Assembly: GCF_036365525.1 (NCBI RefSeq)
Contig: NC_090416.1
Location: 15,162,945 to 15,226,944 of the forward strand
DNA length: 64,000 bases
Direction: 5' to 3'
DNA from: Heterodontus francisci
Taxonomy: Eukaryota
In this document: positions 30,201 to 64,000 of the stretch, in pieces
Position numbering within the stretch: the first letter of the stretch is position 1
Layout: the number at the start of each line of letters is the position of its first letter
The notes under the pieces: model-generated
Told to the model about the DNA's origin: nothing
What the model saw: only the letters and a program-made list of their open reading frames with translations
Database searches by the model: none
Position numbers and translations under genes: made by a program

Positions 30201-30347
30201 GCTTCTATTACATCAATCCCAGTCACGATCAGCAGGGTGTCCTCCTCGCGCAAATTTTGGGATAAATAAACAATCTGGCCAGGAGCAGTGGCATCACCAT
30301 ATCCAGCTCAATGACTCTCAGAGTTCCTTGTCATATGATACATGGTC

Positions 30348-30597
30348 AACAGTGCCACCTACTGTAGAGGGAATACCTGGGAACAGTGCCACCTACTGTC
30401 GAGGTAGCTCCTGCGAACAGTGCCACCTCCTGTCTAGGGAATACCTGGTAACAGTGCCACCTACTGTCGAGGTAGCACCTGCGAACAGTGCCACCAACTG
30501 TCGAGGGAATACCTGCGAACAGTGCCACCTACTGTAGAGGGAATACCTGGGAACAGTGCCACCTACTGTCGTGGGAGTACGTGGGAACAGTGCCAAC
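30348..30597 (+). repeat. Mini-array of ~7.3 copies of the 34-bp satellite
   Basis: AACAGTGCC recurs at 30348, 30382, 30416, 30450, 30484, 30518, 30552 and 30586. Confidence 0.95.
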
Positions 30598-38316: not shown

Positions 38317-38652
38317 TCAGTCGGAACAAGCGGTGGAGCTGATGGTTTTGAGGAGAGGTGAGCTCAGAGAGCCGTGGTCCACACTGCAGGTATAGCTGGA
38401 GCCCTTATTCCAGGCAGTGGTGGGGACTCTCAGGTAACTGCTCAGGCTGTAGGTTTGATCACTGTCCGTGGACACGGTGCCTGTGGTCACCCCGCTGTCT
38501 GTCTCTTTATCATCCACTCTCCAGAGAACCCGCATGAAACCCGGCTGAAAGCGGCTCACCAGGCAGGACAGAGTAGCCCATCCGGAGTCTATTTCTTCCG
38601 AGGAAGGAGGGAGGAGGGAGCAGGAGAACTGATGGTTTCCGATCCTCACTAC
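38317..38652 (-). pseudogene. Frameshifted Ig light-chain constant exon (cluster C)
   Basis: 336 nt versus 329 nt because of a 7-bp duplication (GGAGGGA on +, ~38606-38619). The spliced frame reads SEDRKPSVLLLPPPSFLGRNRLR... and stops at 38510; no J or V upstream within the window. Confidence 0.88.
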
Positions 38653-38837
38653 CTGTTTGTGAGGGAAAAGAAAATTCATTAATATATAACCCGTTAGCAG
38701 TGGACATTTTGACCTGAAATCTGATTGGAAGCACTGTAAACTCTCCTGATCCACTTTAACTTTAAAATGAATTACTGATCCACTCAGGAGTTCCAAAAAA
38801 TTCTCAGATCTCTAGTTGCTGAGCTAATCTGCCAATT

Positions 38838-41800
38838 CTGTAGAGGGAGCACCTGGGAACTGTGCCATCGACTGTAGAGGGGGCATTTTGGAACAGTGCT
38901 AGCTTATGTAGAGGGGGCACCTGGGAGCACCGCGACCGACTGTAGTAGGAGAACCAGGCAACAGCGCCACCTACAGTAAAGGGAGGACCTGGGAACAGTG
39001 CCACCTAATGGAGAGTGAGCACCTGGGAACAGTGCCACCTATTGAACAGGGAGCACCTGGGAACAGTGCCGCCTGCTGCAGCAGGAACAGCTGGGAACAG
39101 TGCTACCGACTGTAGTGGGAGCACGTGGGAACAGCGCTACCTACTGCAGTGGGAGCACCTTGCAACAGCGCCGTCCACTGCAGAGGGAAGACCTGGGAAC
39201 AGTGCCACCGAATGGAGAGGGAGCATCTGGGAACAGTGCCACCTGCTGTAGCGGGAACAGCTGGAAACAGTGAAACCTACTGTAGAGGGCGCACCTGGGA
39301 ACAGTGCCACCTACTGTAGAGGTGGCATCTGGGAACAGTGCCAACTAATGCACAGGGGGCCTCTGGGATCAGTGCCACCTAATGTAGAGGGAGAACCTGG
39401 GAACAGTGCCACCTAATGCAGAGTGAGCACCTGGGAACAGTGCCACCTAATGAACAGGGAGCACCTGGGAACAGTGCTGCCTACTGTAGCAGGAACAGCT
39501 GGGACCGGTGCTACCTACTGTAGAGGGAGCACCTGGGAACACCGCAGCCCAATGCAGAGGGAGCACCTGGGAACAGGGCCACCTACAGTAGAGGGGGCAC
39601 CTGGGAACAGCTACCTACTGTAGTGAGAGCACCTTGTAACAGCGCCGCCTACTGCAGTGGGAGGACCTGGGAACAGTGCCACGTAATGGAGAGGGAGCAT
39701 CTGGGAACAGTGTCACCTGCTGTTCAGGGAGCGCCTGGGAACAGTGCCGCCTACTGCAGCGGGAACAGCTGGAAACAGTGCCACCTACTGTAGAGGGAGC
39801 ACCTGGGAACAGTGCCACTGACTGTCGAGGGGGCATCTGGGAACAGTGCTACCTAATGTAGAGTGGGCACCTGGGAACAGTGCCATTTATTACAGACGCG
39901 GCACCTGGGAACAGTGCCACCTAATGTAGAGTGGGCACCTGGGAACAGTGTCATTTATTACAGACGTGGCACCTGGGAATAGTGCCACCAAATGTAGAGA
40001 TGGCACCTGGGAACAGCGCCTCCTACTGTAATGGGAGTACCTTGGAACAGTGCCACCTACTGTAGAGGGGCATCTGGGAACAGTGCCACCTAATGCAGAG
40101 GGGGCATTTGGGAACAGTGCCACCTAATGTAGAGTGAGAACCTGGGAACAGTGCCAACTAATGGAGAGGCTGCATTTGGGAACAGTGCCACCGACTGTAG
40201 TGGGAGCACCTGGGAAAAGAACCGCCTAATGTAGCGGGAACAGCTGCGAACAGTGCCACCTACAGTGGAGGGAACACCTTGGAACGGCGCCACCTTCTGC
40301 AGAGGGAGCACCTGGGAACAGTGACACTTACTGTAGAGGGGGCATCTGGGAACAGTGCTACCTAATGTAGAGTGGGCACCTGGGAACAGTGCCATTTATT
40401 ACAGACGCGGCACCTGGGAATAGTGCCACCTAATGTAGAGTGGGCACCTGGGAACAGTGCCATTTATTACAGACGCGGCACCTGGGAATAGTGCCACCAA
40501 ATGTAGAGATGGCACCCGAGAACAGCGCCTCATACTGTAATGGGAGCACCTTGGAACAGTGCCACCTACTGTAGAAGGGCACCTGGGAACAGCGCCACCT
40601 ACTGTAGAGGGAGCACCTGGGAACAGCGCCACCTACTGTAGAGTGAGCACCTGGGAACAGTGCAACTGGGAACAGAGAAACCTAATGGAGAGTGAGCACC
40701 TGGGAACAGTGCCACCTACTGAACAGGGAGCACCTGGGAACACTGCCGCCTACTGTAGCAGGAACAGCTGGGAACAGTGCCACGCAATGTAGAGGGAATA
40801 CCTAGGAACAGCGCCACCTACTGTGGAGGGAGCACCTGGGAACAGCGCAGCCAAATGCAGAGGGAGCACCTGGGAACAGGGCCACCTACAGTAGAGGGGG
40901 CACCTGGGAACAGCGCTATCTACTGTCGTGAGAGCACCTTGTAACAGCGCCGCCTACTGCAGAGGGAGGACCTGGGAACAGTGCCACGTAATGGAGAGGG
41001 AGCATCTGGAAACAGTGCCACCTACTGTAGAGGGAGCACCTGGGAATAGTGCCACTTACTGTAGAGGGGCATCTGGGAACAGTGCTACCTAATGTAGAGT
41101 GGGCACCTGGGAACAGTGCCATTTATTACAGACGCGGCACCTGGGAACAGTGCCACCTAAAGTAGAGTGGGCACCTGGGAACAGTGCCATTTATTACAGA
41201 CGCGGCACCTGGGAATAGTGCCACCAAATGTAGAGATGGCACCTGGGAACAGCGCCTCCTACTGTAATGGGAGCACATGGGAACAGTGCAACTGGGAACA
41301 GTGCCACCTAATGGAGAGTGAGCACCTGGGAACAGTGACACTTACTGTAGAGGGGGCATCTGGGAACAGTGCTACCTAATGTAGAGTGGGCACCTGGGAA
41401 CAGTGCCATTTATTACAGAGGCGGCACCTGGGAATAGTGCCACCTAATGTAGAGTGGGCACCTGGGAACAGTGCCATTTATTACAGACGCGGCACCTGGG
41501 AATAGTGCCACCAAATGTAGAGATGGCACCCGGGAACAGCGCCTCATACTGTAATGGGAGCACCTTGGAACAGTGCCACCTACTGTAGAGGGGCATCTGG
41601 GAACAGTGCCACCAAATGCAGAGGGGGCATCTGGGAACAGTGCCACCTAATGTAGAGTGAGAACCTGGGAACAGTGCCAACTAATGGAGAGGGTGCATCT
41701 GGGAACAATGCCACCTACTGTAGTGGGAGCACCTGGGGAAAGAACCGCCTAATGTAGCGGGAACAGCTGCGAACAGTGCCACCTACAGTGGAGGGAACAC

Positions 41801-44800: not shown

Positions 44801-47800
44801 GGAACAGTGCCAATTAATGTAGAGGGGGCATATGGGAACAGTGCCACCTAATATAGAGGGAGAACCTGGGAACAGTGCCAACTAATGGAGAGGGTGCATC
44901 TAGGAAAAGTGCCACCTTCTGTAGTGGGAGCACCTGGGAACAGCACCGCCTAAGGTAGTGGGAACAGCTGCGAACAGCGCCACCTACTGTAGCGGGAGCA
45001 CCGGAAAACAGTGCCCCTGACTGTAGAGGGGGCACCTGGGAATAGTGCCACCTAATGTAGAGTGGGCACCTGGGAATGGTGCCATTTATTACAGGCGCGG
45101 CACCTGGAAATAGTGCCACCAAATGTAGAGATGGCAAATGGGAACAGCGCATCCTACTGTAATGGGAGCACCTTGGAACAGTGCCACCTACTGTAGAGGT
45201 GCATCTGGGAACAGTGCCACCTAATGCAGAGGGGGCATCTGGGAACAGTGCCACCTAATGTAGAGTGAGAACCTGGGAACAGTGCCAACTAATGGAGAGG
45301 GTGCATCTGGGAACAGTGCCACCTACTGTAGTGGGAGCACCTCGGAAAAGCACCGCCTAATGTAGCGGGAACAGCTGTGAACAGTGCCACCTACAGTGGA
45401 GGGAACACCTTGGAACGGCGCCAACTTCAGTAGAGGGAGCACCTGGGAACAGCGCCACCTACTGTAGAGGGAACACCTGGGTACAGCGCCACCTACTGTA
45501 GAGAGAGCACCTGGGAACAGCGCCACCTAATGTGGAGGCAGCACCTGGAAACAGTGCCACCTACTGCAGAGGGAGCACCTGGGAACAGTGCCATCTACTG
45601 TAGAGGGGGCATTTGGGTACAGTGCTACTTAATGTGGAGAGGGCACCTGGGAACACCGCTACCTACTGTAGTAGGAGAGCCAGGCAACAGCGCCACCTAC
45701 GGTAAAGTGAGCACCTGGGTACAGTGCCACCTATTGTACAGTGAGCACCTGGGAACAGTGCCGCCGACTGTAGCAGGAACAGCTGGGAACAGTGCTACCT
45801 ACTGTGGAGGGAGCACCTGGGAACAGCGCAGCCCAATGCAGAGGGAGCACCTGGGAACAGGGACATCTAATGTAGAGGGAACACCTAGGAACAGCGTCAC
45901 CTAATGTAAAGGGTGCATCTGGGAACAGTGCCACCTAATGTAGAGGGAGAACCTGGGAACAGCGCCACCTAATGTAGAGCGGTCTTCTGGGAACAGCGCC
46001 ACCTACTGTAAAGGTGCATCTGGGAACAGTGCCACCGAATGCAGAGGGAGCACCTGGGAACAGCGCTGTCGACTGTAGCGGGAACAGCGGGTAACAGTGC
46101 CACCTACTGTAGTGGAAGCACCTGGGAACAGCACTGCCTATTGTAGAGGGAGCACCTGGGAACAGCGCCACATACTGTACAGGGTACACCTGGGAACAGC
46201 GCCACCTAATGTAGATCGGTCTTCAGGGAACAGCGCCACCTACTGTAAAGGTGCATCTGGGAACAGTGCCACCTAATGTAGAGGGAGCACCTGGGAACAG
46301 TGCCACCTAATGCAGGGGGGGGACCGGGGAACAGTGGCACCTACTGTAGATGGGGCATCTGGGAACAGTGCCACCGAATGCAGAGGGAGCACCTGGGAAC
46401 AGCGCTGCCTACTGTAGCGGAGACAGCGGGTAACATGTGCCACCTACTGTAGTGGAAGCACCTGGGAACAGCGCTGCCTATCGTAGAGGGAGCACCTGGG
46501 AACAGCGCCAGCTACTGCAGAGGGAACACCTGGGAACAGCACCACCTAATGTGGAGGGAGCACCTGGAAACAATGCCACCTACTGTAGAGGGAGCACCTG
46601 GGAACAGTCCCGTCTACTGTAGAGGGGGCATTTGGGAACAGTGCTACCTAATGTAGAGGGGGCACCTGGGAACACCGCTACCTACTGTAGTGGGAGAACC
46701 AGGCAACAGCGCCACCGACAGTAGAGGGAGGACCTGGGAACATGGCCACCTACTGTGCAGGGAGCACCTGGGAACAGTGCCACTTACTGTAACAGGAACA
46801 GCTGGGAACAGTGCTACCTACTATGGAGGGAGCACCTGGGAACAGCGCCGCCCAATGTGGAGGGAGCTCCTGGGTACAGTGCTACCGACAGTGGGGGGGA
46901 GCACCTTGCAACAGCGCCGCCTACTGCAGAGGGAGGACCTGGAAACAGTGCCACCTAATGGAGAGGGAGCACCTGGGAAAATTGCCACCTAATGGAGAGG
47001 GAGCATCTGGGAACAGTGCCACCTGCTGTACAGGGAGTGCCTGGGAACAATGCCGCCGACTGTAGCGGGAACAGCAAGGAACTGTGCCGCATCCGGTAGC
47101 GGGAGCACCTGGAAACAGTGCCACCTAATGTAGAGGGAGCACCTGGGAACAGTGCCACCTACTGTAGAGGGAGGAACTGGAAATAGCGCCACCTACTGTA
47201 GAGGTGGCACTTGGGAACAGTGCCACCTACTGTAGTGGGAGAACCTGGCAACAGCGCTGCCTACAGTAGAGGGAGGACCTGGGAATAGTGCCACCTAATG
47301 AAGTGGGAGCACGTGGGAACAGTACCACCTACTGTACACGGAGCAACTGGGAACAGTGCCGCCTACTGTAGTGGGAACAGCTGGGAATAGTGCTACCTAC
47401 TGTGGACGTAGCACCAGGGAACAGTGCCGCCCAATGGAGAGGGAGCATCTGGGAACAGTGCCACCTACTGTACAGGGAGCGCCTGGAAACAGTGCCGCCT
47501 ACTGCAGCAGGAACAGCTGGAAACAGTGCCACCTACTGTAGAGGGGGCATCTGGGAACAGTGCCACCTAATGGAGAGGGAGCACCTCGGAACAGTGCCAC
47601 CTACTGTAGAGGGGGAATCTGGGAACAGTGATACCTAATGGAGAGGGAGCACCTGGGAACAGTGCCACCTAATGGAGAGGGAGCATCTGGGAACAGTGCC
47701 ACCTACTGCAGAGGGGGCATCTGGGAACAGCGCCTCCTAATGCAAAGGGGGGAACCTGGGAACAGTGCCACTTACTGTAGAGGGGGCACCTGGGAACAGT

Positions 47801-50800
47801 GCCGCCGACTGTAGTGGGAACAGCTGGGAACAGTGCTACCTACTGTGGACATAGCACCAGGGAACAGTGCCGCCCAACGTAGAGGGAGCACCTGGGTACA
47901 GTGCCACCTACCGTCGAGGGAGCACCTGGGAACAGCGCTATCTACTGTAGTGGGAGCACCTTGCAACAGCGCCGCATACTGCAGAGGGAGGACCTGGGAA
48001 CAGCGCTATCTGCTGTAGTCGTAGCACCTTGCAACAGCGCCGCCTACTGCAGAGGGAGGAGCTGGGAACAGTGACACCTAATGGAGAGGGAGCACCTGGG
48101 AACAGTGCCACCTAATGGAGGGGGAGCATCTGGGAACAGTGCCACCTACTGTAGAGGGGGCATCTGGGAACAGTGCCACCTAATGTAGAGGGAGCACCTC
48201 GGAACAGTGCCACCTACTGTAGAGGGGGCATCTGGGAACAGTGATACCTAATGGAGAGGGAGCACCTGGGAACAGTGCCACCTAATGGAGAGGGAGCATC
48301 TGGGAACAGTGCCACCTACTGTACAGGGAGCGCCTGGAAACAGTGCCGCCTACTGTAGCGGGAACAGCTGGAAACAGTGCCACCTACTGTAGAGGGAGCA
48401 CCTGGGAACAGTGCCACTTACTGTAGATGGGGCATCTGAGAACAGTGCCACCGAATGCAGAGGGAGCACCTGGGAACAGCGCTGCCTACTGTAGCGGGAA
48501 CAGCGGGTAACAGTGCCACCTACTGTAGTGGAAGCACCTGGGAACAGCGCTGCCGATTGTAGAGGGAGCACCTGGGAACAGCGCCAGCTACTGTAGAGGG
48601 AACACCTGGGAACAGCACCACCTAATGTGGAGGGAGCACCTGGAAACAATGCCACCAACTGTAGAGGGAGCATCTGGGAACAGTGCCATCTACTATGGAG
48701 GGGGCATTTGGGAACAGTGCTACCTAATGTAGAGGTGGCTCCTGGGAACACCGCTACCTACTGTAGTGGGAGAACCAGGCAACAGCGACGCCTACAGTAG
48801 AGGGAGGACCAGGGATCTGTACCACCTACTGTACAGGGAGCATCTGGGAACAGTGCCACCTACTGTAACAGGAACAGCTGGGAACAGTGCTACCGACTAT
48901 GGAGAGAGCACCTGGGAACAGCGCCGCCCAATGTAGAGGGAGCTCCAATGAACAGGGCAACCTACTGTAGAGGGAGCACATGGGTACAGTGCAACCTACT
49001 GTGGGGGGGAGCACCTTGCAACAGCGCCGCCTACTGCAGAGGGAGGACCTGGAAACAGTGCCACCTAATGGAGAGGGAGCACCTGGGAAAATTGCCACCG
49101 AATGGAGAGGGGGCATCTGGGATCAGTGCCACCTGCTGTACAGGGAGCGCCTGGGAACAATGCCGCCGACTGTAGTGGGAACAGCAAGGAACTGTGCTGC
49201 CTCCTGTAGCGGGAGCACCTGGGAACAGTGCCACCTAATGTAGAGGGAGCACCTGGGAACAGTGCCACCTACTGTAGAGGAGGCATCTGGGAACAGTGCC
49301 ACCTAATGCAGAGGGGGCAGCTAGGAACAGTGCCACCTACTGTAGAGGGGGCACATGGGAACAGAGCCAATTAATGTAGAGGGGGCACCTGGGAACAGAG
49401 CCACCTATTGCAGAGGGGGGACCTGGGAATAGTGCCACCTAATGTTGAGGGAGCACCTAGGAACAGCGCCACCTAATGTAGAGGGAGCACCTGGGAACAG
49501 TGCCACCTACTGTAGAGTCAGCATCTGGGGAACAGTGCCACCTAATGCAGAGGGGGCAGCTAGGAACAGTGCCAATTTATGTAGAGGGGGTACATGGGAA
49601 CAGTGCCAATTTATGTAGAGGGGGCACCTGGCAACAGTGCCACCTATTGCAGAGAGGGCACCTGGGAATAGTGCCACCCAATGTAGAGGGGGCACCTAGG
49701 AACAGCGCCACCTACTGTAAAGGGAGCACCTGGGAACAGTGCCAACTACTGTAGAGGGGTATCTGGGAACAGTACCACCTAATATAAAGGGAACACCTGG
49801 GAACAGTGCCACCTAATGGACATGGTGCATCTGGGAACTGTGCCACCTACTGTAGAGGGAGCACCTGGGAACAGCGCCACCTCCCGTAGAGGGAACACCT
49901 GGGAACAGCGCCACCTACTGCAGAGGGAGCACCTGGGAACAGCGCCACCCACTGTAGAGGGAACACCAGGGACCAGTGCCATCTAATGCAGGGGGCACCT
50001 GGAAACAGTGCCACCTACTGTAGAGGGGGTATCTGGGGAACAGTGCCACCTAATGCAGAGGGAGGAACTGGAAATAGCGCCACCTACTGTAGAGGTGGCA
50101 CTTGGGAACAGTGCCACCTACTGTAGTGGGAGTACCTGGCAACAGCGCTGCCTACAGTAGAGGGAGGACCTGGGAATAGTGCCACCTAATGAAGAGGGAG
50201 CACGTGGGAACAGTACCACCGACTGTACCAGCAGCACCTGGGAACAGTGCCGCCTACTGTAGTGGGAGCAGCTGGGAATAGTGCTACCTGCTGTGGACGT
50301 AGCACCAGGGAACAGTGCCGCCCAATGTAGAGGGAGCACCTGGGTACAGTGCCACCTAACGTCGAGGGAGCACCTGGGAACAGCGCTATCTACTGTAGTG
50401 GGAGCACCTTGCAACCACGTCGCATACTGCAGAGGGAGGAACTGGGAACAGCGCTATCTACTGCAGTCGGAGCACCTTGCAACAGCGCCGCCTACTGCAG
50501 AGGGAGGACCTGGGAACAGTGACACCTAATGGAGAGGGAGCACCTGGGAACAGTGTCACCTAATGGAGAGGGAGCATCTGGGAACAGTGCCACCTACTGT
50601 GCAGGCAGCGCCTGGAAACAGTGCCGCCTACTGCAGAGGGAACAGCTGGAAACAGTGCCACCTACTGTAGAGGGAGCACCTGGGAACAGTGCCACCTACT
50701 GTAGAGAGGGCATCTGGGAACAGTGATACCTAATGGAGAGGGAGCACCTGGGAACAGTGCCACCTAATGGAGAGGGAGCATCTGGGAACAGTGCCACGAA

Positions 50801-53800
50801 CTGTACAGGGAGCGCCTGGAAACAGTGCCACCAACTGTAGCGGGAACAGCTGGAAACAGTGCCACCTACTGTAGAGGGAGCACCTGGGGACAGTGCCACC
50901 GACTGTAGAGGGGGCATCTGGGAATAGTGCCACCTAATGTAGAGGGAGCACCTCGGAACAGTGCCACCTAATGCAGGGGGTCACCTGGGAACAGTGCTAC
51001 CTACTGCAGAGGGGGCATCTGGGAACAGCGCCTCCGAATGCAAAGGGGGGAACCTGGGAACAGTGCCACTTACTGTCGAGGGGGCACCTGGGAACAGTGC
51101 CGCCTACTGTAGTGGGAACAGCTGGGAACAGTGCTACCTACTGTGGACGTAGCACCAGGGAACAGTGCCGCCCAATGTAGAGGGAGCACCTGGGTACAGT
51201 GCCACCTACTGCAGAGGGAGGACCTGGGAACCGTGACACCTAATGGAGAGGGAGCACCTGGGAACAGTGCCACCTAATGGAGAGGGAGTATCTGGGAACA
51301 TTGCCACCTACTGTAGAGGGGGCATCTGGGAACAGTGCCACCTAATGTAGAGGGAGCACCTCGGAACAGTGCCACCTACTGTAGAGGGGGCATCTGGGAA
51401 CAGTGATACCTAATGGAGAGGGAGCACCTGGGAACAGTGCCACCTAATGGAGAGGGAGCTTCTGGGAACAGTGCCACCTACTGTACAGGGAGAACCTGGG
51501 AACAGTGCCACCTACTGTAACAGGAACAGCTGGGAACAGTGCTACCTACTATGGAGAGAGCACCTGGGAACAGCGCCGCCCAATGTAGAGGGAGCTCCAA
51601 GGAACAGGGCCACCTACTGTAGAGGGAGCACATGGGTACAGTGCTACCGACTGTGGGGGGGAGCACCTTGCAACAGCGCCGCCTACTGCAGAGGGAGGAC
51701 CTGGAAACAGTGCCACCTAATGGAGAGGGAGCACCTGGGAAAATTGCCACCGAATGGAGAGGGGGCATCTGGGATCAGTGCCACCGGCTGTACAGGGAGC
51801 GCCTGGGAACAATGCCGCCGACAGTAGCGGGAACAGCAAGGAACTGTGCTGCCTCCTGTAGCGGGAGCACCTGGGAACAGTGCCACCTAATGTAGAGGGA
51901 GCACCTGGGAACAGTGCCACCTACTGTAGAGGAGGCATCTGGGAACAGTGCCACCTAATGCAGAGGGGGCAGCTAGGAACAGTGCCACTTACTGTAGAGG
52001 GGCACATGGGAACAGTGCCAATTTATGTAGAGGGTCACCTGGGAACAGTGCCACCTATTGCAGAGGGGGCACCTGGGAATAGTGCCACCTAATGTTGAGG
52101 GAGCACCTAGGAACAGCGCCACCTAATGTAGAGGGAGCACCTGGGAACAGTGCCACCTACTGTAGAGTCAGCATCGGGGGAACAGTGCCACCTAATGCAG
52201 AGGGGGCAGCTAGGAACAGTGCCATTTTATGTAGAGGGGGTACATGGGAACAGTGCCAATTTATGTAGAGGGGGCACCTGGGAACAGTGCCACCTATTGC
52301 AGAGGGGGCACCTGGGAATAGTGCCACCCAATGTAGAGGGGGCACCTAGGAACAGCGCCACCTACTGTAAAGGGAGCACCTGGGAACAGTGCCAACTACT
52401 GTAGAGGGGTATCTGGGAACAGTACCACCGAATGTAAAGGGAACACCTGGGAACAGTGCCACCTAATGGACATGGTGCATCTGGGAACTGTGCCACCTAC
52501 TGTAGAGGGAGCACCTGGGAACAGAGCCACCTCCCGTAGAGGGAACACCTGGGAACAGCGCCACCTACTGCAGAGGGAGCAACTGGGAACAGTGCCATCT
52601 AATGCAGGGGGGCACCTGGAAACAGTGCCACCTACTGTAGAGGGGGTATCTGGGGAACAGTGCCACCTAATGCAGAGGGAGGAACTGGAAATAGCGCCAC
52701 CTACTGTAGAGGTGGCATTTGGGAACAGTGCCACATACTGTAGTGGGAGTACCTGGCAACAGCGCTGCCTACAGTAGAGGGAGGACCTGGGAATAGTGCC
52801 ACCTAATGAAGAGGGAGCACGTGGGAACAGTACCACCGACTGTACCAGCAGCACCTGGGAACAGTGCCGCCTACTGTAGTGGGAGCAGCTGGGAATAGTG
52901 CTACCTACTGTGGACGTAGCACCAGGGAGCAGTGCCGCCCAATGTAGAGGGAGCACCTGGGTACAGTGCCACCTACCGTCGAGGGAGCACCTGGGAACAG
53001 CGCTATCTACTGTAGTGGGAGCACCTTGCAACAGCGTCGCATACTGCAGAGGGAGGAACTGGGAACAGCGCTATCTACTGCAGTCGTAGCACCTTGCAAC
53101 AGCGCCGCCTACTGCAGAGGGAGCACCTGGGAACAGTGCCACCTAATGGAGATGGAGCATCTGGGAACAGTGCCACCTACTGTACAGGCAGCGCCTGGAA
53201 ACAGTGCCGCCAACTGTAGCGGGAACAGCTGGAAACAGTGCCACCTACTGTAGAGGGAGCACCTGGGAACAGAGCCACCTACTGTCGAGAGGGCATCTGG
53301 GAACAGTGATACCTAATGGAGAGGGAGCACCTGGGAACAGTGCCACCTAATGGAGAGGGAGCATCTGGGAACAGTGCCACCTACTGTACAGGGAGCACCT
53401 GGAAACAGTGCCGCCAACTGTAGCGGGAACAGCTGGAAACAGTGCCACCTACTGTAGAGGGAGCACCTGGGGACAGTGCCACCGACTGTAGAGGGGGCAT
53501 CTGGGAATAGTGCCACCTAATGTAGAGGGAGCACCTCGGAACAGTGCCACCTAATGCAGGGGGTCACCTGGGAACAGTGCTACCTACTGTAGAGGGGGCA
53601 TCTGGGAACAGCGCCTCCGAATGCAAAGGGGGGAACCTGGGAACAGTGCCACTTACTGTCGAGGGGGCACCTGGGAACAGTGCCGCCTACTGTAGTGGGA
53701 ACAGCTGGGAACAGTGCTACCTACTGTGGACGTAGCACCAGGGAACAGTGCCGCCCAATGTAGAGGGAGCACCTGGGTACAGTGCCACCTACTGCAGAGG

Positions 53801-56800
53801 GAGGACCTGGGAACCGTGACACCTAATGGAGAGGGAGCACCTGGGAACAGTGCCACCTAATGGAGAGGGAGTATCTGGGAACATTGCCACCTACCGTAGA
53901 GGGGGCATCTGGGAACAGTGCCACCTAATGTAGAGGGAGCACCTCGGAACAGTGCCACCTACTGTAGAGGGGGCATCTGGGGACAGTGATACCTAATGGA
54001 GAGGGAGCACCTGGGAACAGTGCCACCTAATGGAGAGGGAGCTTCTGGGAACAGCGCCACCTACTGTACAGGGAGCACATGGGAACAGTGCCACCTACTG
54101 TAACAGGAACAGCTGGGAACAGTGCTACCTACGATGGAGAGAGCACCTGGGAACAGCGCCGCCCAATGTAGAGGGAGCTCCTAGGAACAGGGCCACCTAC
54201 TGTAGAGGGAGCACATGGGTACAGTGCTACCTACTGTGGGGGGGAGCACCTTGCAACAGCGCCGCCTACTGCAGAGGGAGGACCTGGAAACAGTGCCACC
54301 TAATGGAGAGGGATCACCTGGGAAAATTGCCACCGAATGGAGAGGGAGCATCTGGGATCAGTGCCACCTGCTGTACAGGGAGCGCCTGGGAACAATGCCG
54401 CCGACTGTAGCGGGAACAGCAAGGAACTGTGCCGCATCCTGTCGTGGGAGCACCTGGGAACAGTGCCACCTAATGTAGAGGGGGCAGCTAGGAACAGTGC
54501 CACTTACTGTAGAGGGGGCACATGGGAACAGTGCCAATTTATGTAGAGGGGGCACCTGGGAACAGTGCCACCTAATGCAGAGGGGGCAGCTAGGAACAGT
54601 GCCACTTACTGTAGAGGCAGCACCTGGGAACAGTGCCACCTACTGTAGAGGGAGCATCTGGGGAACAGTGCCACCTAATGCAGAGGGGGCAGCTAGGAAC
54701 AGTGCCAATTTATGTAGAGGGAGTACATGGGAACAGTGCCAATTTATGTAGAGGGGACACCTGGGAACAGTGCCACCTATTGCAGAGGGGGCACCTGGGA
54801 ACAGTGCCACCTAATGTAGAGGGGGCACCTAGGAACAGCGCCACCTACTGTAAAGGGAGCACCTGGGAACAGTGCCAACTACTGTAGAGGGGCATCTGGG
54901 AACAGTACCACCTAATGTAAAGGGAACACCTGGGAACAGTGCCACCTAATGGACATGGTGCATCTGGGAACTGTGCCACCTACTGTAGAGGGAGCACCTG
55001 GTAACAGCGCCACCTCCCGTAGAGGGAACACCTGGGAACAGCGCCACCTCCTGCAGAGGGAGGACCTGGGAACAGTGACACCGAATGGAGAGGGAGCACC
55101 TGGGAACAGTGCCACCTAATGGAGAGGGAGCATCTGGGAACAGTGCCACCTACTGTACAGGGAGCGCCTGGAAACAGTGCCGCCGACTGTAGAGGGAACA
55201 GCTGGAAACAGTGCCACCTACTGTAGAGGGAGCACCTGGGAACAGTGCCACCTACTGTAGAGAGGGCATCTGGGAACAGTGATACCTAATGGAGAGGGAG
55301 CACCTGGGAACAGTGCCACCTAATGGAGAGGGAGCATCTGGGAACAGTGCCACCTACTGTACAGGGAGCGCCTGGAAACAGTGCCGCCAACTGTAGCGGG
55401 AACAGCTGGAAACAGTGCCACCTACTGTAGAGGGAGCAACTGGGGACAGTGCCACCTACTGTAGAGCGAGCACCTCGGAACAGTGCCACCTAATGCAGGG
55501 GGTCACCTGGGAACTTTGCTACCTACTGTAGAGGGGGCATCTGGGAACAGCGCCTCCTAATGCAAAGGGGGGAACCTGGGAACAGTGCCACTTACTGTCG
55601 AGGGGGCACCTGCGAACAGTGCCGCCTACTGTAGTGGGAACAGCTGGGAACAGTGCTACCTACTGTGGACGTAGCACCAGGGAACAGTGCCGCCCAATGT
55701 AGAGGGAGCACCTGGGTACAGTGCCACCTACTGCAGAGGGAGGACCTGGGAACCGTGACACCTAATGGAGAGGGAGTATCTGGGAACATTGCCACCTAAT
55801 GGAGAGGGAGTATCTGGAACATTGCCACCTACTGTAGAGGGGGCATCTGGGAACAGTGCCACCTAATGTAGAGGGAGCACCTCGGAACAGTGCCACCTAC
55901 TGTAGAGGGGGCAGCTGGGAACAGTGATACCTAATGGAGAGGGAGCACCTGGGAACAGTGCCACCTAATGGAGAGGGAGCTTCTGGGAACAGTGCCACCT
56001 ACTGTACAGGGAGAACCTGGGAACAGTGCCACCTACTGGAACAGGAACAGCTGGGAACAGTGCTACCTACTATGGAGAGAGCACCTGGGAACAGCACCGC
56101 CCAATGTAGAGGGAGCTCCTAGGAACAGGGCCACCTACTGTAGAGGGAGCACATGGGTACATTGCTACCTACTGTGGAGGGGAGCACCTTGCAACAGCGC
56201 CGCCTACTGCAGAGGGAGGACCTGGAAACAGTGCCACCTAATGGAGAGGGAGCACCTGGGAAAATTGCAACCGAATGGAGAGGGAGCATCTGGGATCAGT
56301 GCCACCTGCTGTACAGGGAGCGCCTGGGAACAATGCCGCCGACTGCAGCGGGAACAGCAAGGAACTGTGCCGCCTCCTGTAGCGGGAGCACCTGGGAACA
56401 GTGCCACCTAATGTAGTGGGGGCACCTGGGAACTGTGCCACCTACTGTAGAGGAGGCATCTGGGAACAGTGCCACCTAATGCAGAGGGGGCAGCTAGGAA
56501 CAGTGCCACTTACTGTAGAGGGGGCACATGGGAACAGTGCCAATTTATGTAGAGGGGGCACCTGGGAACAGTGCCACCTATTGCAGAGGGGGCACCTGGG
56601 AATAGTGCCACCTAATGTTGAGGGGGCACCTAGGAACAGCGCCACCTAATGTAGAGGGAGCACCTGGGAACAGTGCCACCTACTGTAGAGGGAGCATCTG
56701 GGGAACAGTGCCACCTAATGCAGAGGGGGCAGCTAGGAACAGTGCCAATTTATGTAGAGCGGGTACATGGGAACAGTGCCAATTTATGTAGAGGGGGCAC

Positions 56801-59800
56801 CTGGGAACAGTGCCACCTATTGCAGAGGGGGCACCTGGGAATAGTGCCACCTAATGTAGAGGGGGCACCTAGGAACAGCGCAACCTACTGTAAAGGGAGC
56901 ACCTGGGAACAGTGCCAACTACTGTAGAGGGGCATCTGGGAACAGTAGCACCTAATGTAAAGGGAACACCTGGGAACAGTGCCACCTAATGGACATGGTG
57001 CATCTGGAAACTGTGCCACCTACTGTAGAGGGAGCACCTGGTAACAGCGCCACCTCCCGTAGAGGGAACACCTGGGAACAGCGCCACCTCCTGCAGAGGG
57101 AGCACCTGGGAACAGCGCCACCTACTGTAGAGGGAACACCAGGGAACCGTGCCATCTAATGCAGGGGGGCACCTGGAAATAGTGCCACCTACTGTAGAGG
57201 GGGTATCTGGGGAACAGTGCCACCTAATGCAGAGGGAGGAACTGGAAATAGAGCCACCTACTGTAGTGGTGGCACTTGGGAACAGTGCCACCTACTGTAG
57301 TGGGAGAACCTGGCAACAGCGCTGCCTACAGTAGAGGGAGGACCTGGGAATAGTGCCACCTAAAGAAGAGGGAGCACGTGGGAACAGTACCACCTACTGT
57401 ACCAGCAGCACCTGGGAACAGTGCCGCCTACTGTAGTGGGAGCAGCTGGGAATAGTGCTACCTACTGTCGACGTAGCACCAGGGAACAGTGCCGCCCAAT
57501 GTAGAGGGAGCACCTGGGTACAGTGCCACCTACCGTCGAGTGAGCACCTGGGAACAGCGCTATCGACTGTAGTGGGAGCACCTTGCAACAGCGCCGCCTA
57601 CTGCACAGGGAGCACCTGGGAACAGTGACACCTAATGGAGAGCGAGCATCTGGGAACAGTGCCACCTACTGTACAGGGAGCGCCTGGAAACAGTGCCGCC
57701 GACTGTAGTGGGAACAGCTAGAAACAGTGCCACCTACTGTGGAGGGAGCACCTGGGAACAGTGCCACCTACTGTAGAGAGGTCATCTGGGAACAGTGATA
57801 CCTAATGGAGATGGAGCACCTGGGAACAGTGCCACCTAATGGAGAGGGAGCATCTGGGAACAGTGCCACCTACTGTACAGGGAGCGCCTGGAAACAGTGC
57901 CGCCTACTGTAGCGGGAACAGCTGGAAACAGTGCCACCTACTGTAGAGGGAGCACCTGGGAACAGTGCCACCTACTGTCGAGGGGGCATCTGGGAATAGT
58001 GCCACCTAATGTAGAGGGAGCACCTCGGATCAGTGCCACCTAATGCAGGGGGTCACCTGGGAACAGTGCCACCTACTGTAGAGGGGGCATCTGGGAACAG
58101 CGCCTCCTAATGCAAAGGGGGGAACCTGGGAACAGTGCCACTTACTGTAGAGGGAGCACCTGGGAACAGTGCCGCCTACTGTAGTGGGAACAGCTGGGAA
58201 CAGTGCTACCTACTGTGGACGTAGCACCAGGGAACAGTGCCGCCCAATGTAGAGGGAGCACCTGGGTACAGTGCCACCTACCGTCGAGGGAGCACCTGGG
58301 AACAGCGCTATCTACTGTAGTGGGAGCACCTTGCAACAGCGCCGCCTACTGCAGAGGGAGGACCTGGGAACAGTGACACCTAATGGAGAGGGAGCACCTG
58401 GGAACAGTGCCACCTAATGGAGAGCGAGCATCTGGGAACAGTGCCACCTACTGTACAAGGAGCGCCTGGAAACAGTTCCGCCGACTGTAGTGGGAACAGC
58501 TAGAAACAGTGCCACCTACTGTGGAGGGAGCACCTGGGAACAGTGCCACCTACTGCAGAGAGGGCATCTGGGAACAGTGATACCTAATGCAGATGGAGCA
58601 CCTGGGAATTGTGCCACCTAATGGAGAGGGAGCATCTGGGAACAGTGCCACCTAATTTACAGGGAGCGCCTGGAAACAGTGCCGCCTACTGTAGCGGGAA
58701 CAGCTGGAAACAGTGCCACCTACTGTAGAGGGAGCACCTGGGAACAGTGCCACCTACTGTCGAGGGGGCATCTGGGAATAGTGCCACCTAATGTAGAGGG
58801 AGCACCTCGGATCAGTGCCACCTAATGCAGGGGGTCACCTGGGAACAGTGCCACCTACTGTAGAGGGGGCATCTGGGAACAGCGCCTCCTAATGCAAAGG
58901 GGGGAACCTGGGAACAGTGCCACTTACTGTCGAGGGAGCACCTGGGAACAGTGCCGCCTACTGTAGTGGGAACAGCTGGGAACAGTGCTACCTACTGTGG
59001 ACGTAGCACCAGGGAACAGTGCCGCCCAATGTAGAGGGAGCACCTGGGTACAGTGCCACCTACCGTCGAGGGAGCACCTGGGAACAGCGCTATCTACGGT
59101 AGTGGGAGCACCTTGCAACAGCGTCGCATGCTGCAGAGGGAGGACCTGGGAACAGCGCTATCTACTGTAGTCGGAGCACCTTGCAACAGCGCCGCCTACT
59201 GCAGAGGGAGGATCTGGGAACCGTGACACCTAATGGAGAGGGAGCACCTGGGAACCGTGATACCTAATGGAGAGGGAGCACCTGGGAACAGTGCCACCTG
59301 CTGGAGAGGGAGCTTCTGGGAACAGTGCCACCTACTGTACAGGGAGAACCTGGGAACAGTGCCACCTACTGTAACAGGAACAGCTGGGAACAGTGCTACC
59401 TACTGTGGAGAGAGCACCTGGGAACAGCGCCGCCCAATGTAGAGGGAGCTCCTAGGAACAGGGCCACCTACTGTAGAGGGAGCACATGGGTACAGTGCTA
59501 CCTACTGTGGGGGGGAGCACCTTGCAACAGCGCCGCCTACTGCAGAGGGAGAACCTGGAAACAGTGCCACCTAATGGAGAGGGAGCACCTGGGAAAATTG
59601 CCACCGAATGGAGAGGGAGCATCTGGGATCAGTGCCACCTGCTGTACAGGGAGCGCCTGGGAACAATACCGCCGACTGTAGCGGGAACAGTAAGGAACTG
59701 TGCCACCTACTGTGGAGGGAGCACCTGGGAACAGTGCCACCTACTGCAGAGAGGGCATCTGGGAACAGTGATACCTAATGGAGATGGAGCACCTGGGAAC

Positions 59801-62800
59801 AGTGCCACCTAATGGAGAGGGAGCATCTGGGAACAGTGCCACCTACTTTACAGGGAGCGCCTGGAAACAGTGCCGCCTACTGTAGCGGGAACAGCTGGAA
59901 ACAGTGCCACCTACTGTAGAGGGTGCACCTGGGAACAGTGCCACCTACTGTCGAGGGGGCATCTGGGAATAGTGCCACCTAATGTAGAGGAAGCACCTCG
60001 GATCAGTGCCACCTAATGCAGGGGGTCACCTGGGAACAGTGCCACCTACTGTAGAGGGGGCATCTGGGAACAGCGCCTCCTAATGCAAAGGGGGGAACCT
60101 GGGAACAGTGCCACTTACTGTAGAGGGAGCACCTGGGAACAGTGCCGCCTACTGTAGTGGGAACAGCTGGGAACAGTGCTACCTACTATGGACGTAGCAC
60201 CAGGGAACAGTGCCGCCCAATGTAGAGGGAGCACCTGGGTACAGTGCCACCTACCGTCGAGGGAGCACCTGGGAACAGCGCTATCTACGGTAGTGGGAGC
60301 ACCTTGCAACAGCGTCGCATGCTGCAGAGGGAGGACCTGGGAACCGTGACACCTAATGGAGAGGGAGCACCTGGGAACAGTGATACCTAATGGAGAGGGA
60401 GCACCTGGGAACAGTGCCACCTACTGGAGAGGGAGCTTCTGGGAACAGTGCCACCTACTGTACAGGGAGAACCTGGGAACAGTGCCACCTACTGTAACAG
60501 GAACAGCTGGGAACAGTGCTACCAACTATGGAGAGAGCACCTGGGAACAGCGCCGCCCAATGTAGAGGGAGCTCCTAGGAACAGGGCCACCTACTGTAGA
60601 GGGAGCACATGGGTACAGTGCTACCGACTGTGGGGGGGAGCACCTTGCAACAGCGCCGCCTACTGCAGAGGGAGGACCTGGAAACAGTGCCACCTAATGG
60701 AGAGGGAGCACCTGGGAAAATTGCCACCGAATGGAGAGGGAGCATCTGGGATCAGTGCCACCTGCTGTACAGGGAGCGCCTGGGAACAATGCCGCCGACT
60801 GTAGCGGGAACAGTAAGGAACTGTGCCGCCTCCTGTAGCGGGAGCACCTGGGAACAGTGCCACCTACTGTAGAGGGAGCACCTGGGAACAGTGCCACCTA
60901 CTGTAGAGGAGGCATCTGGGAACAGTGCCACCTAATGCAGAGGGGGCAGCTAGGAACAGTGCCACATACTGTAGAGGGGGCACATGGGAACAGTGCCAAT
61001 TTATGTAGAGGGGGTACCTGGGAACAGTGCCACCTAATGCAGAGGGGGCAGCTAGGAACAGTGCCACTTACTGTAGAGGGAGCACCTGGGAACAGTGCCA
61101 CCTATTGCAGAGGGGGCACCTGGGAATAGTGCCACCTAATGTAGAGGGGGCACCTAGGAACAGCGCCACCTACTGTAAAGGGAGCACCTGGGAACAGTGC
61201 CAACTACTGTAGAGGGGCATCTGGGAACAGTACCACCTAATGTAAAGGGAACACCTGGGAACAGTGCCACCTAATGGACATGGTGCATCTGGGAACTGTG
61301 CCACCTACTGTAGAGGGAGCACCTGGTAACAGCGCCACCTCCCGTAGAGGGAGCACCTGGGAACAGTGCCACCTAATGGAGAGGGAGCATCTGGGAACAG
61401 TGCCACCTACTGTACAGGGAGCGCCTGGAAACAGTGCCGCCTACTGTAGAGGGAACAGCTGGGAACAGTGATACCTCATGGAGAGGGAGCACCTGGGAAC
61501 AGTGCCACCTAATGGAGAGGAAGCATCTGGGAACAGTGCCACCTACTGTACAGGGAGCGCCTGGAAACAGTGCCGCCAACTGTAGCGGGAACAGCTGGAA
61601 ACAGTGCCACCTACTGTAGAGGGAGCACCTGGGGACAGTGCCACCTACTGTAGAGGGAGCACCTCGGAACAGTGCCACCTAATGCAGGGGGTCACCTGGG
61701 AACAGTGCTACCTACTGTAGAGGGGGCATCTGGGAACAGCGCCTCCTAATGCAAAGGGGGGAACCTGGGAACAGTGCCACTTACTGTCGAGGGGGCACCT
61801 GCGAACAGTGCCGCCTACTGTAGTGGGAACAGCTGGGAACAGTGCTACCTACTGTGGACGTAGCACCAGGGAACAGTGCCGCCCAATGTAGAGGGAGCAC
61901 CTGGGTACAGTGCCACCTACTGCAGAGGGAGGACCTGGGAACCGTGACACCTAATGGAGAGGGAGTATCTGGGAACATTGCCACCTAATGGAGAGGAAGT
62001 ATCTGGGAACATTGCCACCTACTGTAGAGGGGGCATCTGGGAACAGTGCCACCTAATGTAGAGGGAGCACCTCGGAACAGTGCCACCTGCTGTAGAGGGG
62101 GCATCTGGGAACAGTGATACCTAATGGAGAGGGAGCACCTGGGAACAGTGCCACCTAATGGAGAGGGAGCTTCTGGGAACAGTGCCACCTACTGTACAGG
62201 GAGAACCTGGGAACAGTGCCACCTACTGTAACAGGAACAGCTGGGAACAGTGCTACCTACTATGGAGAGAGCACCTGGGAACAGCGCCGCCCAATGTAGA
62301 GGGAGCTCCTAGGAACAGGGCCACCTACTGTAGAGGGAGCACATGGGTACAGTGCTACCTACTGTGGGGGGGAGCACCTTGCAACAGCGCCGCCTACTGC
62401 AGAGGGAGGACCTGGAAACAGTGCCACCTAATGGAGAGGGAGCACCTGGGAGAATTGCCACCGAATGGAGAGGGAGCATCTGGGATCAGTGCCACCTGCT
62501 GTACAGGGAGCGCCTGGGAACAATGCCGCCGACTGTAGCGGGAACAGCAAGGAACTGTGCCGCCTCCTGTAGCGGGAGCACCTGGGAACAGTGCCACCTA
62601 ATGTAGAGGGAGCACCTGGGAAAAGTGCCACCTACTGTACAGGGAGCGCCGGAAACAGTGCCGCCTACTGTAGCGGTAACAGCTGGAAACAGTGCCACCT
62701 ACTATAGAGGGAGCACCTGGGAACAGTGCCACCTACTGTCGAGGGGGCATCTGGGAATAGTGCCACCTAATGTAGAGGGAGCACCTCGGAACAGTGCCAC

Positions 62801-64000
62801 CTAATGCAGGGGGTCACCTGGGAACAGTGCCACCTACTGTAGAGGGGGCATCTGGGAACAGCGCCTCCTAATGCAAAGGGGGGAACCTGGGAACAGTGCC
62901 ACTTACTGTAGAGGGGGCACCTGGGAACAGTGCCGCCTACTGTAGTGGGAAGAGCTGGGAACAGTGCTACCTACTGTGGACGTAGCACCAGGGAACAGTG
63001 CCGCCCAATGTAGAGGGAGCACCTGGGTACAGTGCCACCTACCGTCGAGGGAGCACCTGGGAACAGCGCTATCTACGGGAGTGGGAGCACCTTGCAACAG
63101 CGTCGCATGCTGCAGAGGGAGGACCTGGGAACAGCGCTATCTACTGTAGTCGTAGCACCTAGCAACAGCGCCGCCTACTGCAGAGGGAGGACCTGGGAAC
63201 AGTGACACCTAATGGAGAGGGAGCACCTGGGAACAGTGCCACCTAATGGAGAGGGAGCATCTGGGAACAGTGCCACCTACTGTACAGGGAGCGCCTGGAA
63301 ACAGTGCCGCCAACTGCAGCAGGAACAGCTGGAAACAGTGCCACCTACTGTAGCGGGAGCACCTGGGAACAGTGCCACCTACTGTAGAGGGGGCATCTGG
63401 GAACTGTGTTACCTAATGTAGAGGGAGCACCTCGGAACAGTGCCACCTACTGTAGAGGGGGCATCTGGGAACAGTGATACCTAATGGAGAGGGAGCACCT
63501 GGGAACAGTGCCACCTAATGGAGAGGGAGCTTCTGGGAACAGTGCCACCTACTGTACAGGGAGCGCCTGGAAACTGTGCCGCCTACTGTCGCGGAAACAG
63601 CTGGAAACAGTGCCACCTACTGTAGAGGGAGCACCTGGGAACAGTGCCACCTACTGTAGATGGGGCATCTGAGAACAGTGCCACCGAATGCAGAGGGAGC
63701 ACCTGGGAACAGCGCTGCCTACTGTAGCGGGAACAGCGGGTAACAGTGCCACCTACTGTAGTGGAAGTACCTGGGAACAGCGCTGCCTACTGTAGCGGGA
63801 ACAGCGGGTAACAGTGCCACCTACTGTAGTGGAAGTACCTGGGAACAGCGCTGCCTATTGTAGAGGGAGCAGCTGGGAACAGCGCCAGCTACTGTGGAGG
63901 AAACACCTGGGAACAGCACCACCTAATGTGGAGGGAGCACCTGGAAACAATGCCACCTACTGTAGAGGGAGCACCTGGGAACTGTGCCATCTACTGTAGA
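38838..64000 (+). repeat. 34-bp satellite array, >25 kb, ~740 monomers, consensus CTGGGAACAGTGCCACCTACTGTAGAGGGAGCAC
   Basis: Continuous 34-bp periodicity in a single orientation; runs off the window end. Confidence 0.98.

What the first reader, a model, noticed from the sequence alone, without database searches (positions are those of the whole stretch)
38838..64000. A 25-kb satellite of co-oriented CTCF-like motifs abutting an Ig light-chain cluster array
Seen: the most conserved part of each 34-bp monomer, CAG(T/C)GCCACCTA(C/A)TG(T/G), reads on the minus strand as ACAGTAGGTGGCACTG or CCATTAGGTGGCACTG. Some monomers read CCAGTAGGTGGCACTG (56024-56039, 60412-60427) or CCAGCAGGTGGCACTG (59289-59304). 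Known: the CTCF core is CCASYAGRKGGCRS, so common monomers are one mismatch away and those three match fully. Oriented CTCF-element clusters bound mammalian antigen-receptor loci (Igh 3' CBEs), and some macrosatellites (DXZ4, D4Z4) bind CTCF. Inference: hundreds of same-orientation sites, all pointing toward the Ig clusters, could act as a satellite-built loop anchor or insulator for a shark multicluster Ig locus. I am not aware of this being described.
Basis: partly seen in the sequence, partly recalled or inferred. Interest (0 to 1): 0.85.

Follow-up and report, generated by a model that had tools for sequence, protein, structure and literature searches.

The report
CTCF-motif satellite beside shark antibody genes
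A real 25-kb tandem repeat next to antibody light-chain gene clusters carries a good, same-direction match to the CTCF binding site in most of its 34-base units, but the units mutate as if nothing protects that site, so a role as a chromatin-loop barrier is possible but unshown.

Summary
The sequence facts hold. A 34-bp satellite of 741 units fills 38838-64000 and runs off the window. Its consensus unit scores 16.3 bits against the CTCF matrix on the minus strand. Only 37 of 200,000 shuffled units do as well. At least 8 bits is reached by 485 sites on the minus strand and 31 on the plus strand.

Three corrections:
- The CTCF core is not the best-conserved part of the unit. Neither old variants nor recent substitutions avoid it (5.5% against 4.9% outside).
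- The satellite does not lie beyond the cluster array. It starts inside a third, older cluster unit, 186 bp upstream of a C exon that a 7-nt duplication has frameshifted.
- The repeat is low-copy, roughly 50-90 kb genome-wide, so it is not a scattered major satellite.

CpG is depleted (0.26), and no RNA contig covers the repeat. A 7-unit mini-array upstream of the nearest intact V gene does keep its CTCF core better than the rest.

Best reading: a neutrally decaying, locus-restricted satellite grown from a unit that held a CTCF site. It can bind CTCF, but binding and boundary function are untested. The scan noted other CTCF-motif minisatellites at TCR genes of this genome, which I did not check.

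The parts
38838..64000 (-). 34-bp satellite of 741 units that runs off the window end. The CTCF-like motif reads on the minus strand, once per unit.
   Evidence: Block duplicates of 10-52 units at 94-96% identity, mostly in 47.5-64 kb.
30348..30595 (-). 7-unit mini-array of the same repeat, 3.5 kb upstream (in gene direction) of V2. Its 7 sites score 12.5-18.1 bits. Units 1 and 2 lack it.
   Evidence: CTCF-core columns are variable at 2 of 16, the rest at 10 of 18.
38653..38837 (-). The last 185 bp of the J-C intron of cluster unit 3. Homology to units 1 and 2 stops sharply at 38838, which corresponds to unit 1 position 10494.
38317..38652 (-). C exon of unit 3. It carries a 7-nt duplication (CTCCCTC) relative to C1 and C2, so it is out of frame with stops in the normal splice phase and is probably a pseudo-exon.
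   Evidence: The exon border at 38652 is seen as an RNA loose end.
26911..38837 (-). Cluster unit 3, older and truncated. It is 83-92% identical to units 1 and 2, depending on the segment, and has no V or J in the window.
13456..26910 (-). Cluster unit 2. The V ORF is 26420-26875, J coding is 26131-26095, and the C exon is 23436-23764.
   Evidence: The J2 3' end matches the RNA loose end exactly.
1..13455 (-). Cluster unit 1.
- V ORF at 12963-13400, with a 12-RSS (heptamer 13056-13050, nonamer 13037-13029).
- J with a 23-RSS (nonamer 12713-12705, heptamer 12681-12675, coding 12674-12638).
- C exon at 9979-10307.
   Evidence: (V-set and C1-set).
37748..37766 (+). Plus-strand CTCF-like site of 11.8 bits, which would be convergent with the arrays. 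One copy per unit (also at 9393 and 22849), inside a high-copy repeat.
   Evidence: The bin 37673-37869 has about 1500x depth in X9.

Best explanation
This is an old satellite, restricted to this locus, that grew from a founder unit carrying a strong CTCF site. That unit was probably of the kind still seen in the 7-copy mini-array in the spacer.

It grew first by unit amplification and later by irregular duplication of blocks of 0.3-1.8 kb. It now replaces or splits off the V-J part of a dead light-chain cluster.

About a third to two thirds of its units are still competent CTCF motif matches, all on the minus strand. If the chromatin is open, CTCF would bind a subset. The 34-bp spacing is below its footprint of roughly 40-50 bp, so at most about every second unit could be occupied (general knowledge). 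Its N-terminus would face lower coordinates and stall cohesin coming from the V-J-C clusters (inferred).

The motif is not being maintained unit by unit, so any barrier activity is a by-product of the founder sequence rather than a demonstrably selected function.

Shown: the repeat, the motif strength, the strand, the junction, the low copy number and the neutral substitution pattern. Inferred: the founder's origin, CTCF binding and the direction of blocking.
For: - Motif strength beyond composition: 16.3 bits, p = 1.5e-6, and 37 of 200,000 shuffled units reach it.
- Hits: 485, 260 and 119 minus-strand sites at 8, 12 and 16 bits or more. IUPAC with at most 1 mismatch gives 213 hits against 1.96 expected.
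- No constraint in standing variation. Conservation against PWM information gives rho 0.02, rank 34 of 68 offsets, and the core averages 1.35 bits against 1.41 outside the motif.
- The commonest variants cost 4.8-6.2 bits at frequencies of 14-37%.
- No constraint in recent change. Among 274 independent unit pairs from block duplicates, differences are 5.5% in the core and in high-information positions, and 4.9% outside the motif (Fisher p = 0.22-0.25).
- Growth by block duplication is shown.
- Low copy number: X1 word depth is about 228 on the repeat against about 13 for exact single-copy contigs. X9 gives about 5x against 0-0.3x. Both point to roughly 50-90 kb genome-wide, while LINE pieces in the same stretch reach thousands-fold.
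- The junction lies inside the J-C intron of a unit whose C exon is frameshifted.
- The mini-array keeps its core better than the rest of the unit, as expected if the founder was a real site.
Against: - With hundreds of redundant sites, selection on any one unit would be very weak. The neutral pattern therefore cannot exclude an array-level function.
- Copy number is a lower bound.
- X9 is a capture library with very thin off-target depth.
- What lies beyond 64000 is unknown.
- No direct data on CTCF binding, methylation or contacts were available.
- The mini-array contrast rests on 7 copies with a two-type (A/B) structure.
Confidence: 0.5

Rival explanations
1. One reading: the array is a selected CTCF super-anchor or insulator. 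CTCF bound to many co-oriented units stalls cohesin coming from the light-chain clusters, which isolates this cluster group from what lies upstream.
For: - The motif is strong and uniformly oriented.
- Motifs point in the transcription direction toward V2-J2-C2 and V1-J1-C1.
- The family is low-copy rather than genome-wide.
- A second small array with a well-kept core lies 3.5 kb upstream of V2.
- The CTCF orientation code holds in skate (PMC10115646).
- Tandem CTCF repeats can act in an orientation-dependent way in mammals (Dxz4, PMC5899087).
- The scan's unchecked notes report 45-bp CTCF-motif arrays beside TCR V genes in the same genome.
Against: - There is no excess conservation of the core, in either old or recent changes.
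- CpG observed/expected is 0.26, which suggests long-term germline methylation.
- The array sits in a dead cluster.
- The young expressed units lack the mini-array.
- No strong convergent partner is present. The only candidate is a 9-11.8-bit site inside a high-copy repeat.
- The 34-bp spacing is shorter than a CTCF footprint.
- Deleting the CTCF-rich Firre repeat left its boundary intact (PMC5899154, title).
Confidence: 0.2
2. Chance resemblance: the founder unit never was a CTCF site. The array is ordinary silent, methylated satellite DNA of the kind that swells other light-chain clusters in this genome.
For: - Substitution is neutral with respect to the motif, CpG is depleted, and no RNA contigs cover the array.
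- Other large satellites are noted inside light-chain clusters of this genome (unchecked).
- Look-elsewhere: a p of 1.9e-4 per satellite is not extreme across many repeat families and several hundred possible factor motifs. For any one unit and about 700 matrices the chance is about 7% (my estimate).
Against: - CTCF is the one factor expected a priori at antigen-receptor loci.
- The score is high at 16.3 bits.
- The mini-array keeps exactly the core columns.
- Similar CTCF-like arrays are reported at TCR loci (unchecked).
Confidence: 0.2
3. A different protein is the relevant reader. The best-conserved stretch, CACCTGGGAACAG, holds an E-box (CACCTG) and a TGGGAA core of the Ikaros type. The array could therefore act as a sink or heterochromatin tether for lymphoid factors, as Ikaros does at mouse gamma-satellite.
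For: Positions 16-25 are the most conserved of the unit, with positions 19, 21 and 22 at 96-98%. The motif assignments come from general knowledge and were not scored here.
Against: Six-base motifs are expected by chance in any 34-mer. The conservation differences along the unit are small. No test was run.
Confidence: 0.05

Closest known systems
DXZ4/Dxz4, FIRRE and ICCE CTCF-binding tandem repeats of the mammalian X (PMC6985041, PMC3491370, PMC5899087)
   Same: A head-to-tail array with a CTCF motif in every unit, all in one direction. It is locus-restricted rather than dispersed. Dxz4 acts according to its orientation.
   Different: - Units there are kilobases long, against 34 bp here.
- In DXZ4 the CTCF site is the part conserved across mammals, whereas here the core is no better kept than the rest.
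- Binding there is shown by ChIP and is allele-specific. Here nothing is shown.
CTCF-binding element clusters of mammalian antigen-receptor loci (Igh 3' CBEs and IGCR1, Igk Cer/Sis); from general knowledge
   Same: Oriented CTCF motifs lie next to rearranging V-J-C genes and point into the gene domain.
   Different: - Those are about 2-10 unique sites spread over kilobases, not a satellite.
- They serve long-range V-to-(D)J scanning, whereas here V and J are only about 0.3 kb apart within each cluster.
- No convincing convergent partner is present.
45-bp CTCF-motif minisatellites beside TCR V genes in this same genome (scan notes s1-872038, s1-871847, s1-871839; unchecked)
   Same: The same genome, tandem units each with a same-direction CTCF match, next to antigen-receptor segments.
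   Different: The unit length differs (45 against 34 bp) and so does the scale (10-42 units against 741). I could not compare sequences, so relatedness is unknown.
Large satellites filling V-J gaps of kappa-type clusters in this genome (scan notes s1-871646, s1-872190, s1-871829; unchecked)
   Same: Tens of kilobases of satellite lie inside a light-chain cluster, with a sharp junction to gene sequence.
   Different: That is a 61-bp unit in the V-J gap of intact clusters. Here it is a 34-bp unit in the J-C intron position of a cluster whose C exon is broken.

Membership tests
CTCF-binding tandem repeat (DXZ4/FIRRE/ICCE type) | Tandem array with a CTCF motif match in each unit, in one orientation | tested here: met
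   485 minus-strand sites at 8 bits or more against 31 on the plus strand. The consensus unit scores 16.3 bits.
CTCF-binding tandem repeat (DXZ4/FIRRE/ICCE type) | Macrosatellite unit of kilobase size | tested here: not met
   The period is 34 bp.
CTCF-binding tandem repeat (DXZ4/FIRRE/ICCE type) | The CTCF-site region is the best-conserved part of the unit (PMC3491370) | tested here: not met
   - Core 1.35 bits against 1.41 outside the motif, rho 0.02.
- Recent differences 5.5% against 4.9%.
- Met only in the 7-unit mini-array.
CTCF-binding tandem repeat (DXZ4/FIRRE/ICCE type) | CTCF occupancy in vivo and orientation-dependent contacts | not testable with these tools
   No ChIP, CUT&RUN or Hi-C data could be reached.
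Antigen-receptor-locus CTCF element cluster (Igh 3' CBE, IGCR1, Cer/Sis) | Lies at the edge of, or between, rearranging gene-segment domains | tested here: inconclusive
   It lies upstream of two intact V-J-C clusters but inside a truncated third unit. The sequence beyond 64000 is unseen.
Antigen-receptor-locus CTCF element cluster (Igh 3' CBE, IGCR1, Cer/Sis) | Convergent partner sites inside the domain | tested here: inconclusive
   The only candidate is one plus-strand site per unit of 9-11.8 bits. It lies in a high-copy repeat and its count is no more than chance.
Antigen-receptor-locus CTCF element cluster (Igh 3' CBE, IGCR1, Cer/Sis) | CTCF/cohesin binding in lymphocytes, and an effect of deletion on rearrangement | not testable with these tools
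   These are experimental features.
Ordinary satellite DNA | Long head-to-tail array that evolves by unequal exchange or block duplication without site-specific constraint | tested here: met
Ordinary satellite DNA | High genome-wide abundance at many sites | tested here: not met
   Roughly 50-90 kb in total by two runs at 80% likeness or more. This is a lower bound.
Ordinary satellite DNA | CpG depletion consistent with germline methylation | tested here: met
   CpG observed/expected is 0.26 at 57% GC, against 0.43 in the flank. The T/C and A/G variation sits at the two CpG-forming positions.

The most novel reading that the evidence does not exclude
Cartilaginous-fish antigen-receptor loci use tandem arrays of CTCF sites as built-in loop-extrusion barriers. 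Examples are this 34-bp array and mini-array at light-chain clusters and the 45-bp arrays noted at TCR V genes. This array would be bound by CTCF in B-lineage cells and would insulate a group of V-J-C clusters. That would be a satellite-built solution to keeping cluster-type loci independent.
Probability: 0.15. Interest if true: 0.8.

Novelty: new variant of a known kind. Interest (0 to 1): 0.45.

Why it matters
How sharks keep dozens of small V-J-C clusters independent, with one or a few active per cell, is an open question. In mammals CTCF barriers organise antigen-receptor loci, and the CTCF orientation code exists in skates.

A locus-restricted array with hundreds of co-oriented strong CTCF motifs beside light-chain clusters gives a concrete, cheap target for CUT&RUN, methylation calling and Hi-C. 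If it is bound, it would be the first short-unit satellite acting as a CTCF barrier at an immune locus.

If it is not bound, it is a clean example that a strong motif repeated hundreds of times can be neutral. The substitution pattern found here already leans that way.

Tried and rejected
- **Origin from an Ig gene segment or other window sequence.** A sensitive blastn-short search of the unit against 1-38837, with the mini-array masked, gave only 9-10-nt chance matches.
- **Relatives in protein space.** A 211-aa ORF of the satellite and the C exon were searched in the 5.8-billion-protein collection and gave no hits. Eukaryotic exons and repeats are rarely called there, so a blank means little.
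- **Metagenome contig scan** with a degenerate 25-nt unit pattern gave 0 hits.
- **Rfam** on the whole window gave no family.
- **Scan-notes look-up by sequence** was blank twice.
- **Fixed higher-order repeat.** None exists. Unit-to-unit identity is flat at 78.5% for all lags.
- **My own error on duplication.** Self-BLASTs suggested no recent duplication. That was wrong, and unit-level comparison found 92 block duplicates.
- **Light-chain isotype** from PDB matches was uninformative.
- **Canonical upstream CTCF motif at the usual spacing.** By eye and from memory it is not present. This was not formally tested.
- **Joined V-J-C model.** It was not built or searched. Exons were handled apart, by reference. 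Only a one-letter phase offset was used to read the C-exon frame.
Full report
**What is there**

Tandem Repeats Finder reports one array from 38838 to the window end, with period 34, 738 copies and 77% matches. It also reports a 7.3-copy array of the same unit at 30348-30595. Base autocorrelation peaks only at 34 and its multiples. A wrap-around alignment to the consensus CTGTAGAGGGAGCACCTGGGAACAGTGCCACCTA gives 741 units, with 77 inserted bases and 108 deleted cells. The window holds no N. GC rises from about 43% in the flank to about 57% in the array.

**The CTCF match**

Its row sums of 913-908 and its consensus TGGCCACCAGGGGGCGCTA look right, but it should be replaced by the deposited matrix.

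- The consensus unit scores 16.3 bits on the minus strand (TCTACAGTAGGTGGCACTG, p = 1.5e-6) and 7.8 bits on the plus strand.
- Of 200,000 shuffles of the 34 letters, scored cyclically on both strands, 37 reach 16.3 bits.
- In the array, 485, 378, 260 and 119 minus-strand sites reach 8, 10, 12 and 16 bits. The plus strand has 31, 9, 1 and 0.
- A threshold of 8 is the one used for skate with this matrix (PMC10115646).
- Hits are spread evenly along the array.
- With at most one mismatch there are 213 hits, all on the minus strand, against 1.96 expected.

The common unit is a strong PWM hit even though it has A in place of the first C of the core.

**Is the motif protected?**

It is not protected in the large array.

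- Information per position is nearly flat. The core averages 1.35 bits against 1.41 for the positions outside the 19-position motif.
- The best-kept letters lie in CTGGGAACAG, outside the core.
- Conservation does not follow PWM information (Spearman 0.02). The true register ranks 34th of 68 possible registers.
- The commonest variants are damaging: motif position 7 G>T in 37% of units (-4.9 bits), position 12 T>C in 19% (-4.8 bits), and position 13 G>A in 14.5% (-6.2 bits). Variant frequency does not correlate with PWM penalty.
- Real units score slightly above a uniform-substitution simulation (mean 9.3 against 7.9 bits). However, units are not independent of one another.

A cleaner test uses recent change. 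The array contains 92 block duplicates of 10-52 units at 94-96% identity, at irregular distances. They involve 619 of 739 units and lie mostly between 47.5 and 64 kb. From these I took 274 non-overlapping unit pairs. Differences fall on 5.3% of motif cells, 5.5% of core cells, 5.5% of high-information cells and 4.9% of non-motif cells (Fisher p = 0.22-0.25). A one-third depletion would have been obvious.

One caveat applies. With hundreds of redundant sites, selection per unit would be tiny, so this result argues against unit-level maintenance and not against every array-level role.

**The mini-array differs**

In the seven units at 30348-30595, the columns of motif positions 4-19 vary at 2 of 16 columns, and the rest vary at 10 of 18 (p = 0.013). 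Its sites score 12.5-18.1 bits. The sample is small and has a two-type structure. Even so, it is the better candidate for a real, constrained CTCF site cluster, and it may show what the founder unit looked like.

**Setting**

The left 38.8 kb holds three head-to-tail units of a light-chain cluster on the minus strand.

- Units 1 and 2 have a period of 13,455 bp and are 99.2% identical.
- Each has a V exon (V-set) with a 12-RSS, a J with a 23-RSS about 0.3 kb downstream, a 2.3-kb intron and one C exon (C1-set).
- An RNA-like run covers the C exon heavily. Its loose end at the exon border equals the 3' end of J2, so J-C splicing is seen.
- Unit 3 (26956-38838) is 83-92% identical to units 1 and 2, depending on the segment. 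Its homology ends exactly at 38838, which is unit 1 position 10494, 186 bp upstream of the C exon in the J-C intron.
- The junction is sharp, with no decayed units in units 1 and 2 at that place.
- The C exon of unit 3 carries a 7-nt duplication that puts it out of frame, with stops in the normal splice phase.

So the satellite does not simply abut the cluster array. It occupies the place of the intron, J and V of a dead third unit.

Read in gene direction, the order is: satellite, pseudo-C3, 7.7 kb, mini-array, 3.5 kb, V2-J2-C2, spacer, V1-J1-C1. All motifs point downstream into this group. Units 1 and 2 lack the 1.17 kb that holds the mini-array. No progenitor of the unit exists elsewhere in the window.

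**How widespread is it?**

Reads and contigs of four runs were laid on 35900-41800 at 80% likeness or more.

- In X1, exact single-copy contigs have a word depth of about 13. The satellite bins sum to about 228. An exact 196-nt satellite contig has depth 19.
- In X9, satellite bins average about 5x, against 0-0.3x for unique bins.
- Both runs give roughly 50-90 kb of this family genome-wide. This array alone is at least 25 kb.
- LINE pieces in the same stretch reach 1,000-3,500x in X9.

The family is therefore low-copy and probably confined to this locus or a few loci. The figure is a lower bound, because units are only 78.5% alike and X9 is a capture library. RNA contigs (X5) cover the C exon but none cover the satellite.

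**State of the DNA**

CpG observed/expected is 0.26 in the array, against 0.43 in the flank. The main T/C and A/G polymorphisms sit at the two positions that can form CpG. This fits long-term germline methylation. It is the opposite of what is usual for constitutively bound CTCF sites (general knowledge). The consensus motif itself has no CpG, so methylation need not block binding.

**Mechanism and odds**

CTCF blocks cohesin that arrives from the side its motif points to (general knowledge). The orientation code holds in skate (PMC10115646) and the preprint 10.64898/2026.10.19.759930 places it at the base of vertebrates. A bound array would therefore stall cohesin coming from the clusters at lower coordinates. 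The 34-bp spacing is below the usual footprint, so occupancy could reach at most about every second unit.

No strong convergent partner is present. The only candidate is a 9-11.8-bit plus-strand site per unit, inside a high-copy repeat.

My estimates are:
- 0.50 for a neutrally decaying satellite born from a unit holding a CTCF site, with any binding incidental.
- 0.20 for a selected barrier.
- 0.20 for pure chance resemblance.
- 0.05 for another factor being the relevant reader.

**Comparison with known systems**

The nearest known things are the CTCF-binding X-linked tandem repeats DXZ4/Dxz4, FIRRE and ICCE (PMC6985041, PMC3491370, PMC5899087). These have kilobase units, a CTCF site that is the conserved part of the unit, and shown binding. 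The present array fails the first two and cannot be tested for the third, so I do not file it as a member.

Deletion of the Firre repeat left its boundary intact (PMC5899154). This warns that many motifs do not make a boundary.

I found no paper on CTCF-motif satellites in shark Ig loci. The scan's own notes report 45-bp CTCF-motif arrays at TCR V genes and large satellites inside kappa clusters of this genome. These are unchecked leads.

**Verdict**

The finding is worth one experiment rather than a claim.

Noticed in passing
window 1-26910: Units 1 and 2 are 99.2% identical, but their 110 differences are very uneven. None fall in the first 5 kb, 29 fall in the 338-bp V exon (about 8.6%), and the count rises steadily across the J-C intron. 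This looks like a recent duplication or conversion tract joined to diverged V genes.
   Followed up: partly
window 38317-38652 (minus): The C exon of the third unit has a 7-nt tandem duplication (CTCCCTC) near its 5' end. This shifts the frame in the normal splice phase, so it is probably a pseudo-exon.
   Followed up: yes
window 9393-9411, 22849-22867, 37748-37766 (plus): One plus-strand CTCF-like site of 9-11.8 bits lies about 0.6 kb 3' of each C exon, convergent with the arrays. It sits in a repeat of very high copy number.
   Followed up: partly
window 38838-64000, unit positions 13-25: The best-conserved stretch of the unit, CACCTGGGAACAG, contains an E-box (CACCTG) and a TGGGAA core of the Ikaros type. 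The motif assignments are from memory and were not scored.
   Followed up: no
window 38838-39754 versus 47500-64000: The edge of the array next to the gene is older. It has no block duplicates before 39754, and identity to the consensus is 85.4% there against 87-89% further in. Growth has been internal or distal.
   Followed up: partly
window 6440-6880, 19895-20425, 34532-35143 (plus): ORFs that look like reverse-transcriptase pieces of a LINE occur once per unit. Pfam gave no hit for two of them. Read depth shows neighbouring stretches belong to very high-copy repeats.
   Followed up: partly
window 38067-38657: RNA-like contigs cover the C exon and 3' UTR at very high depth, and J-C splicing is seen. 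At 80% likeness this cannot be assigned to one cluster copy.
   Followed up: no
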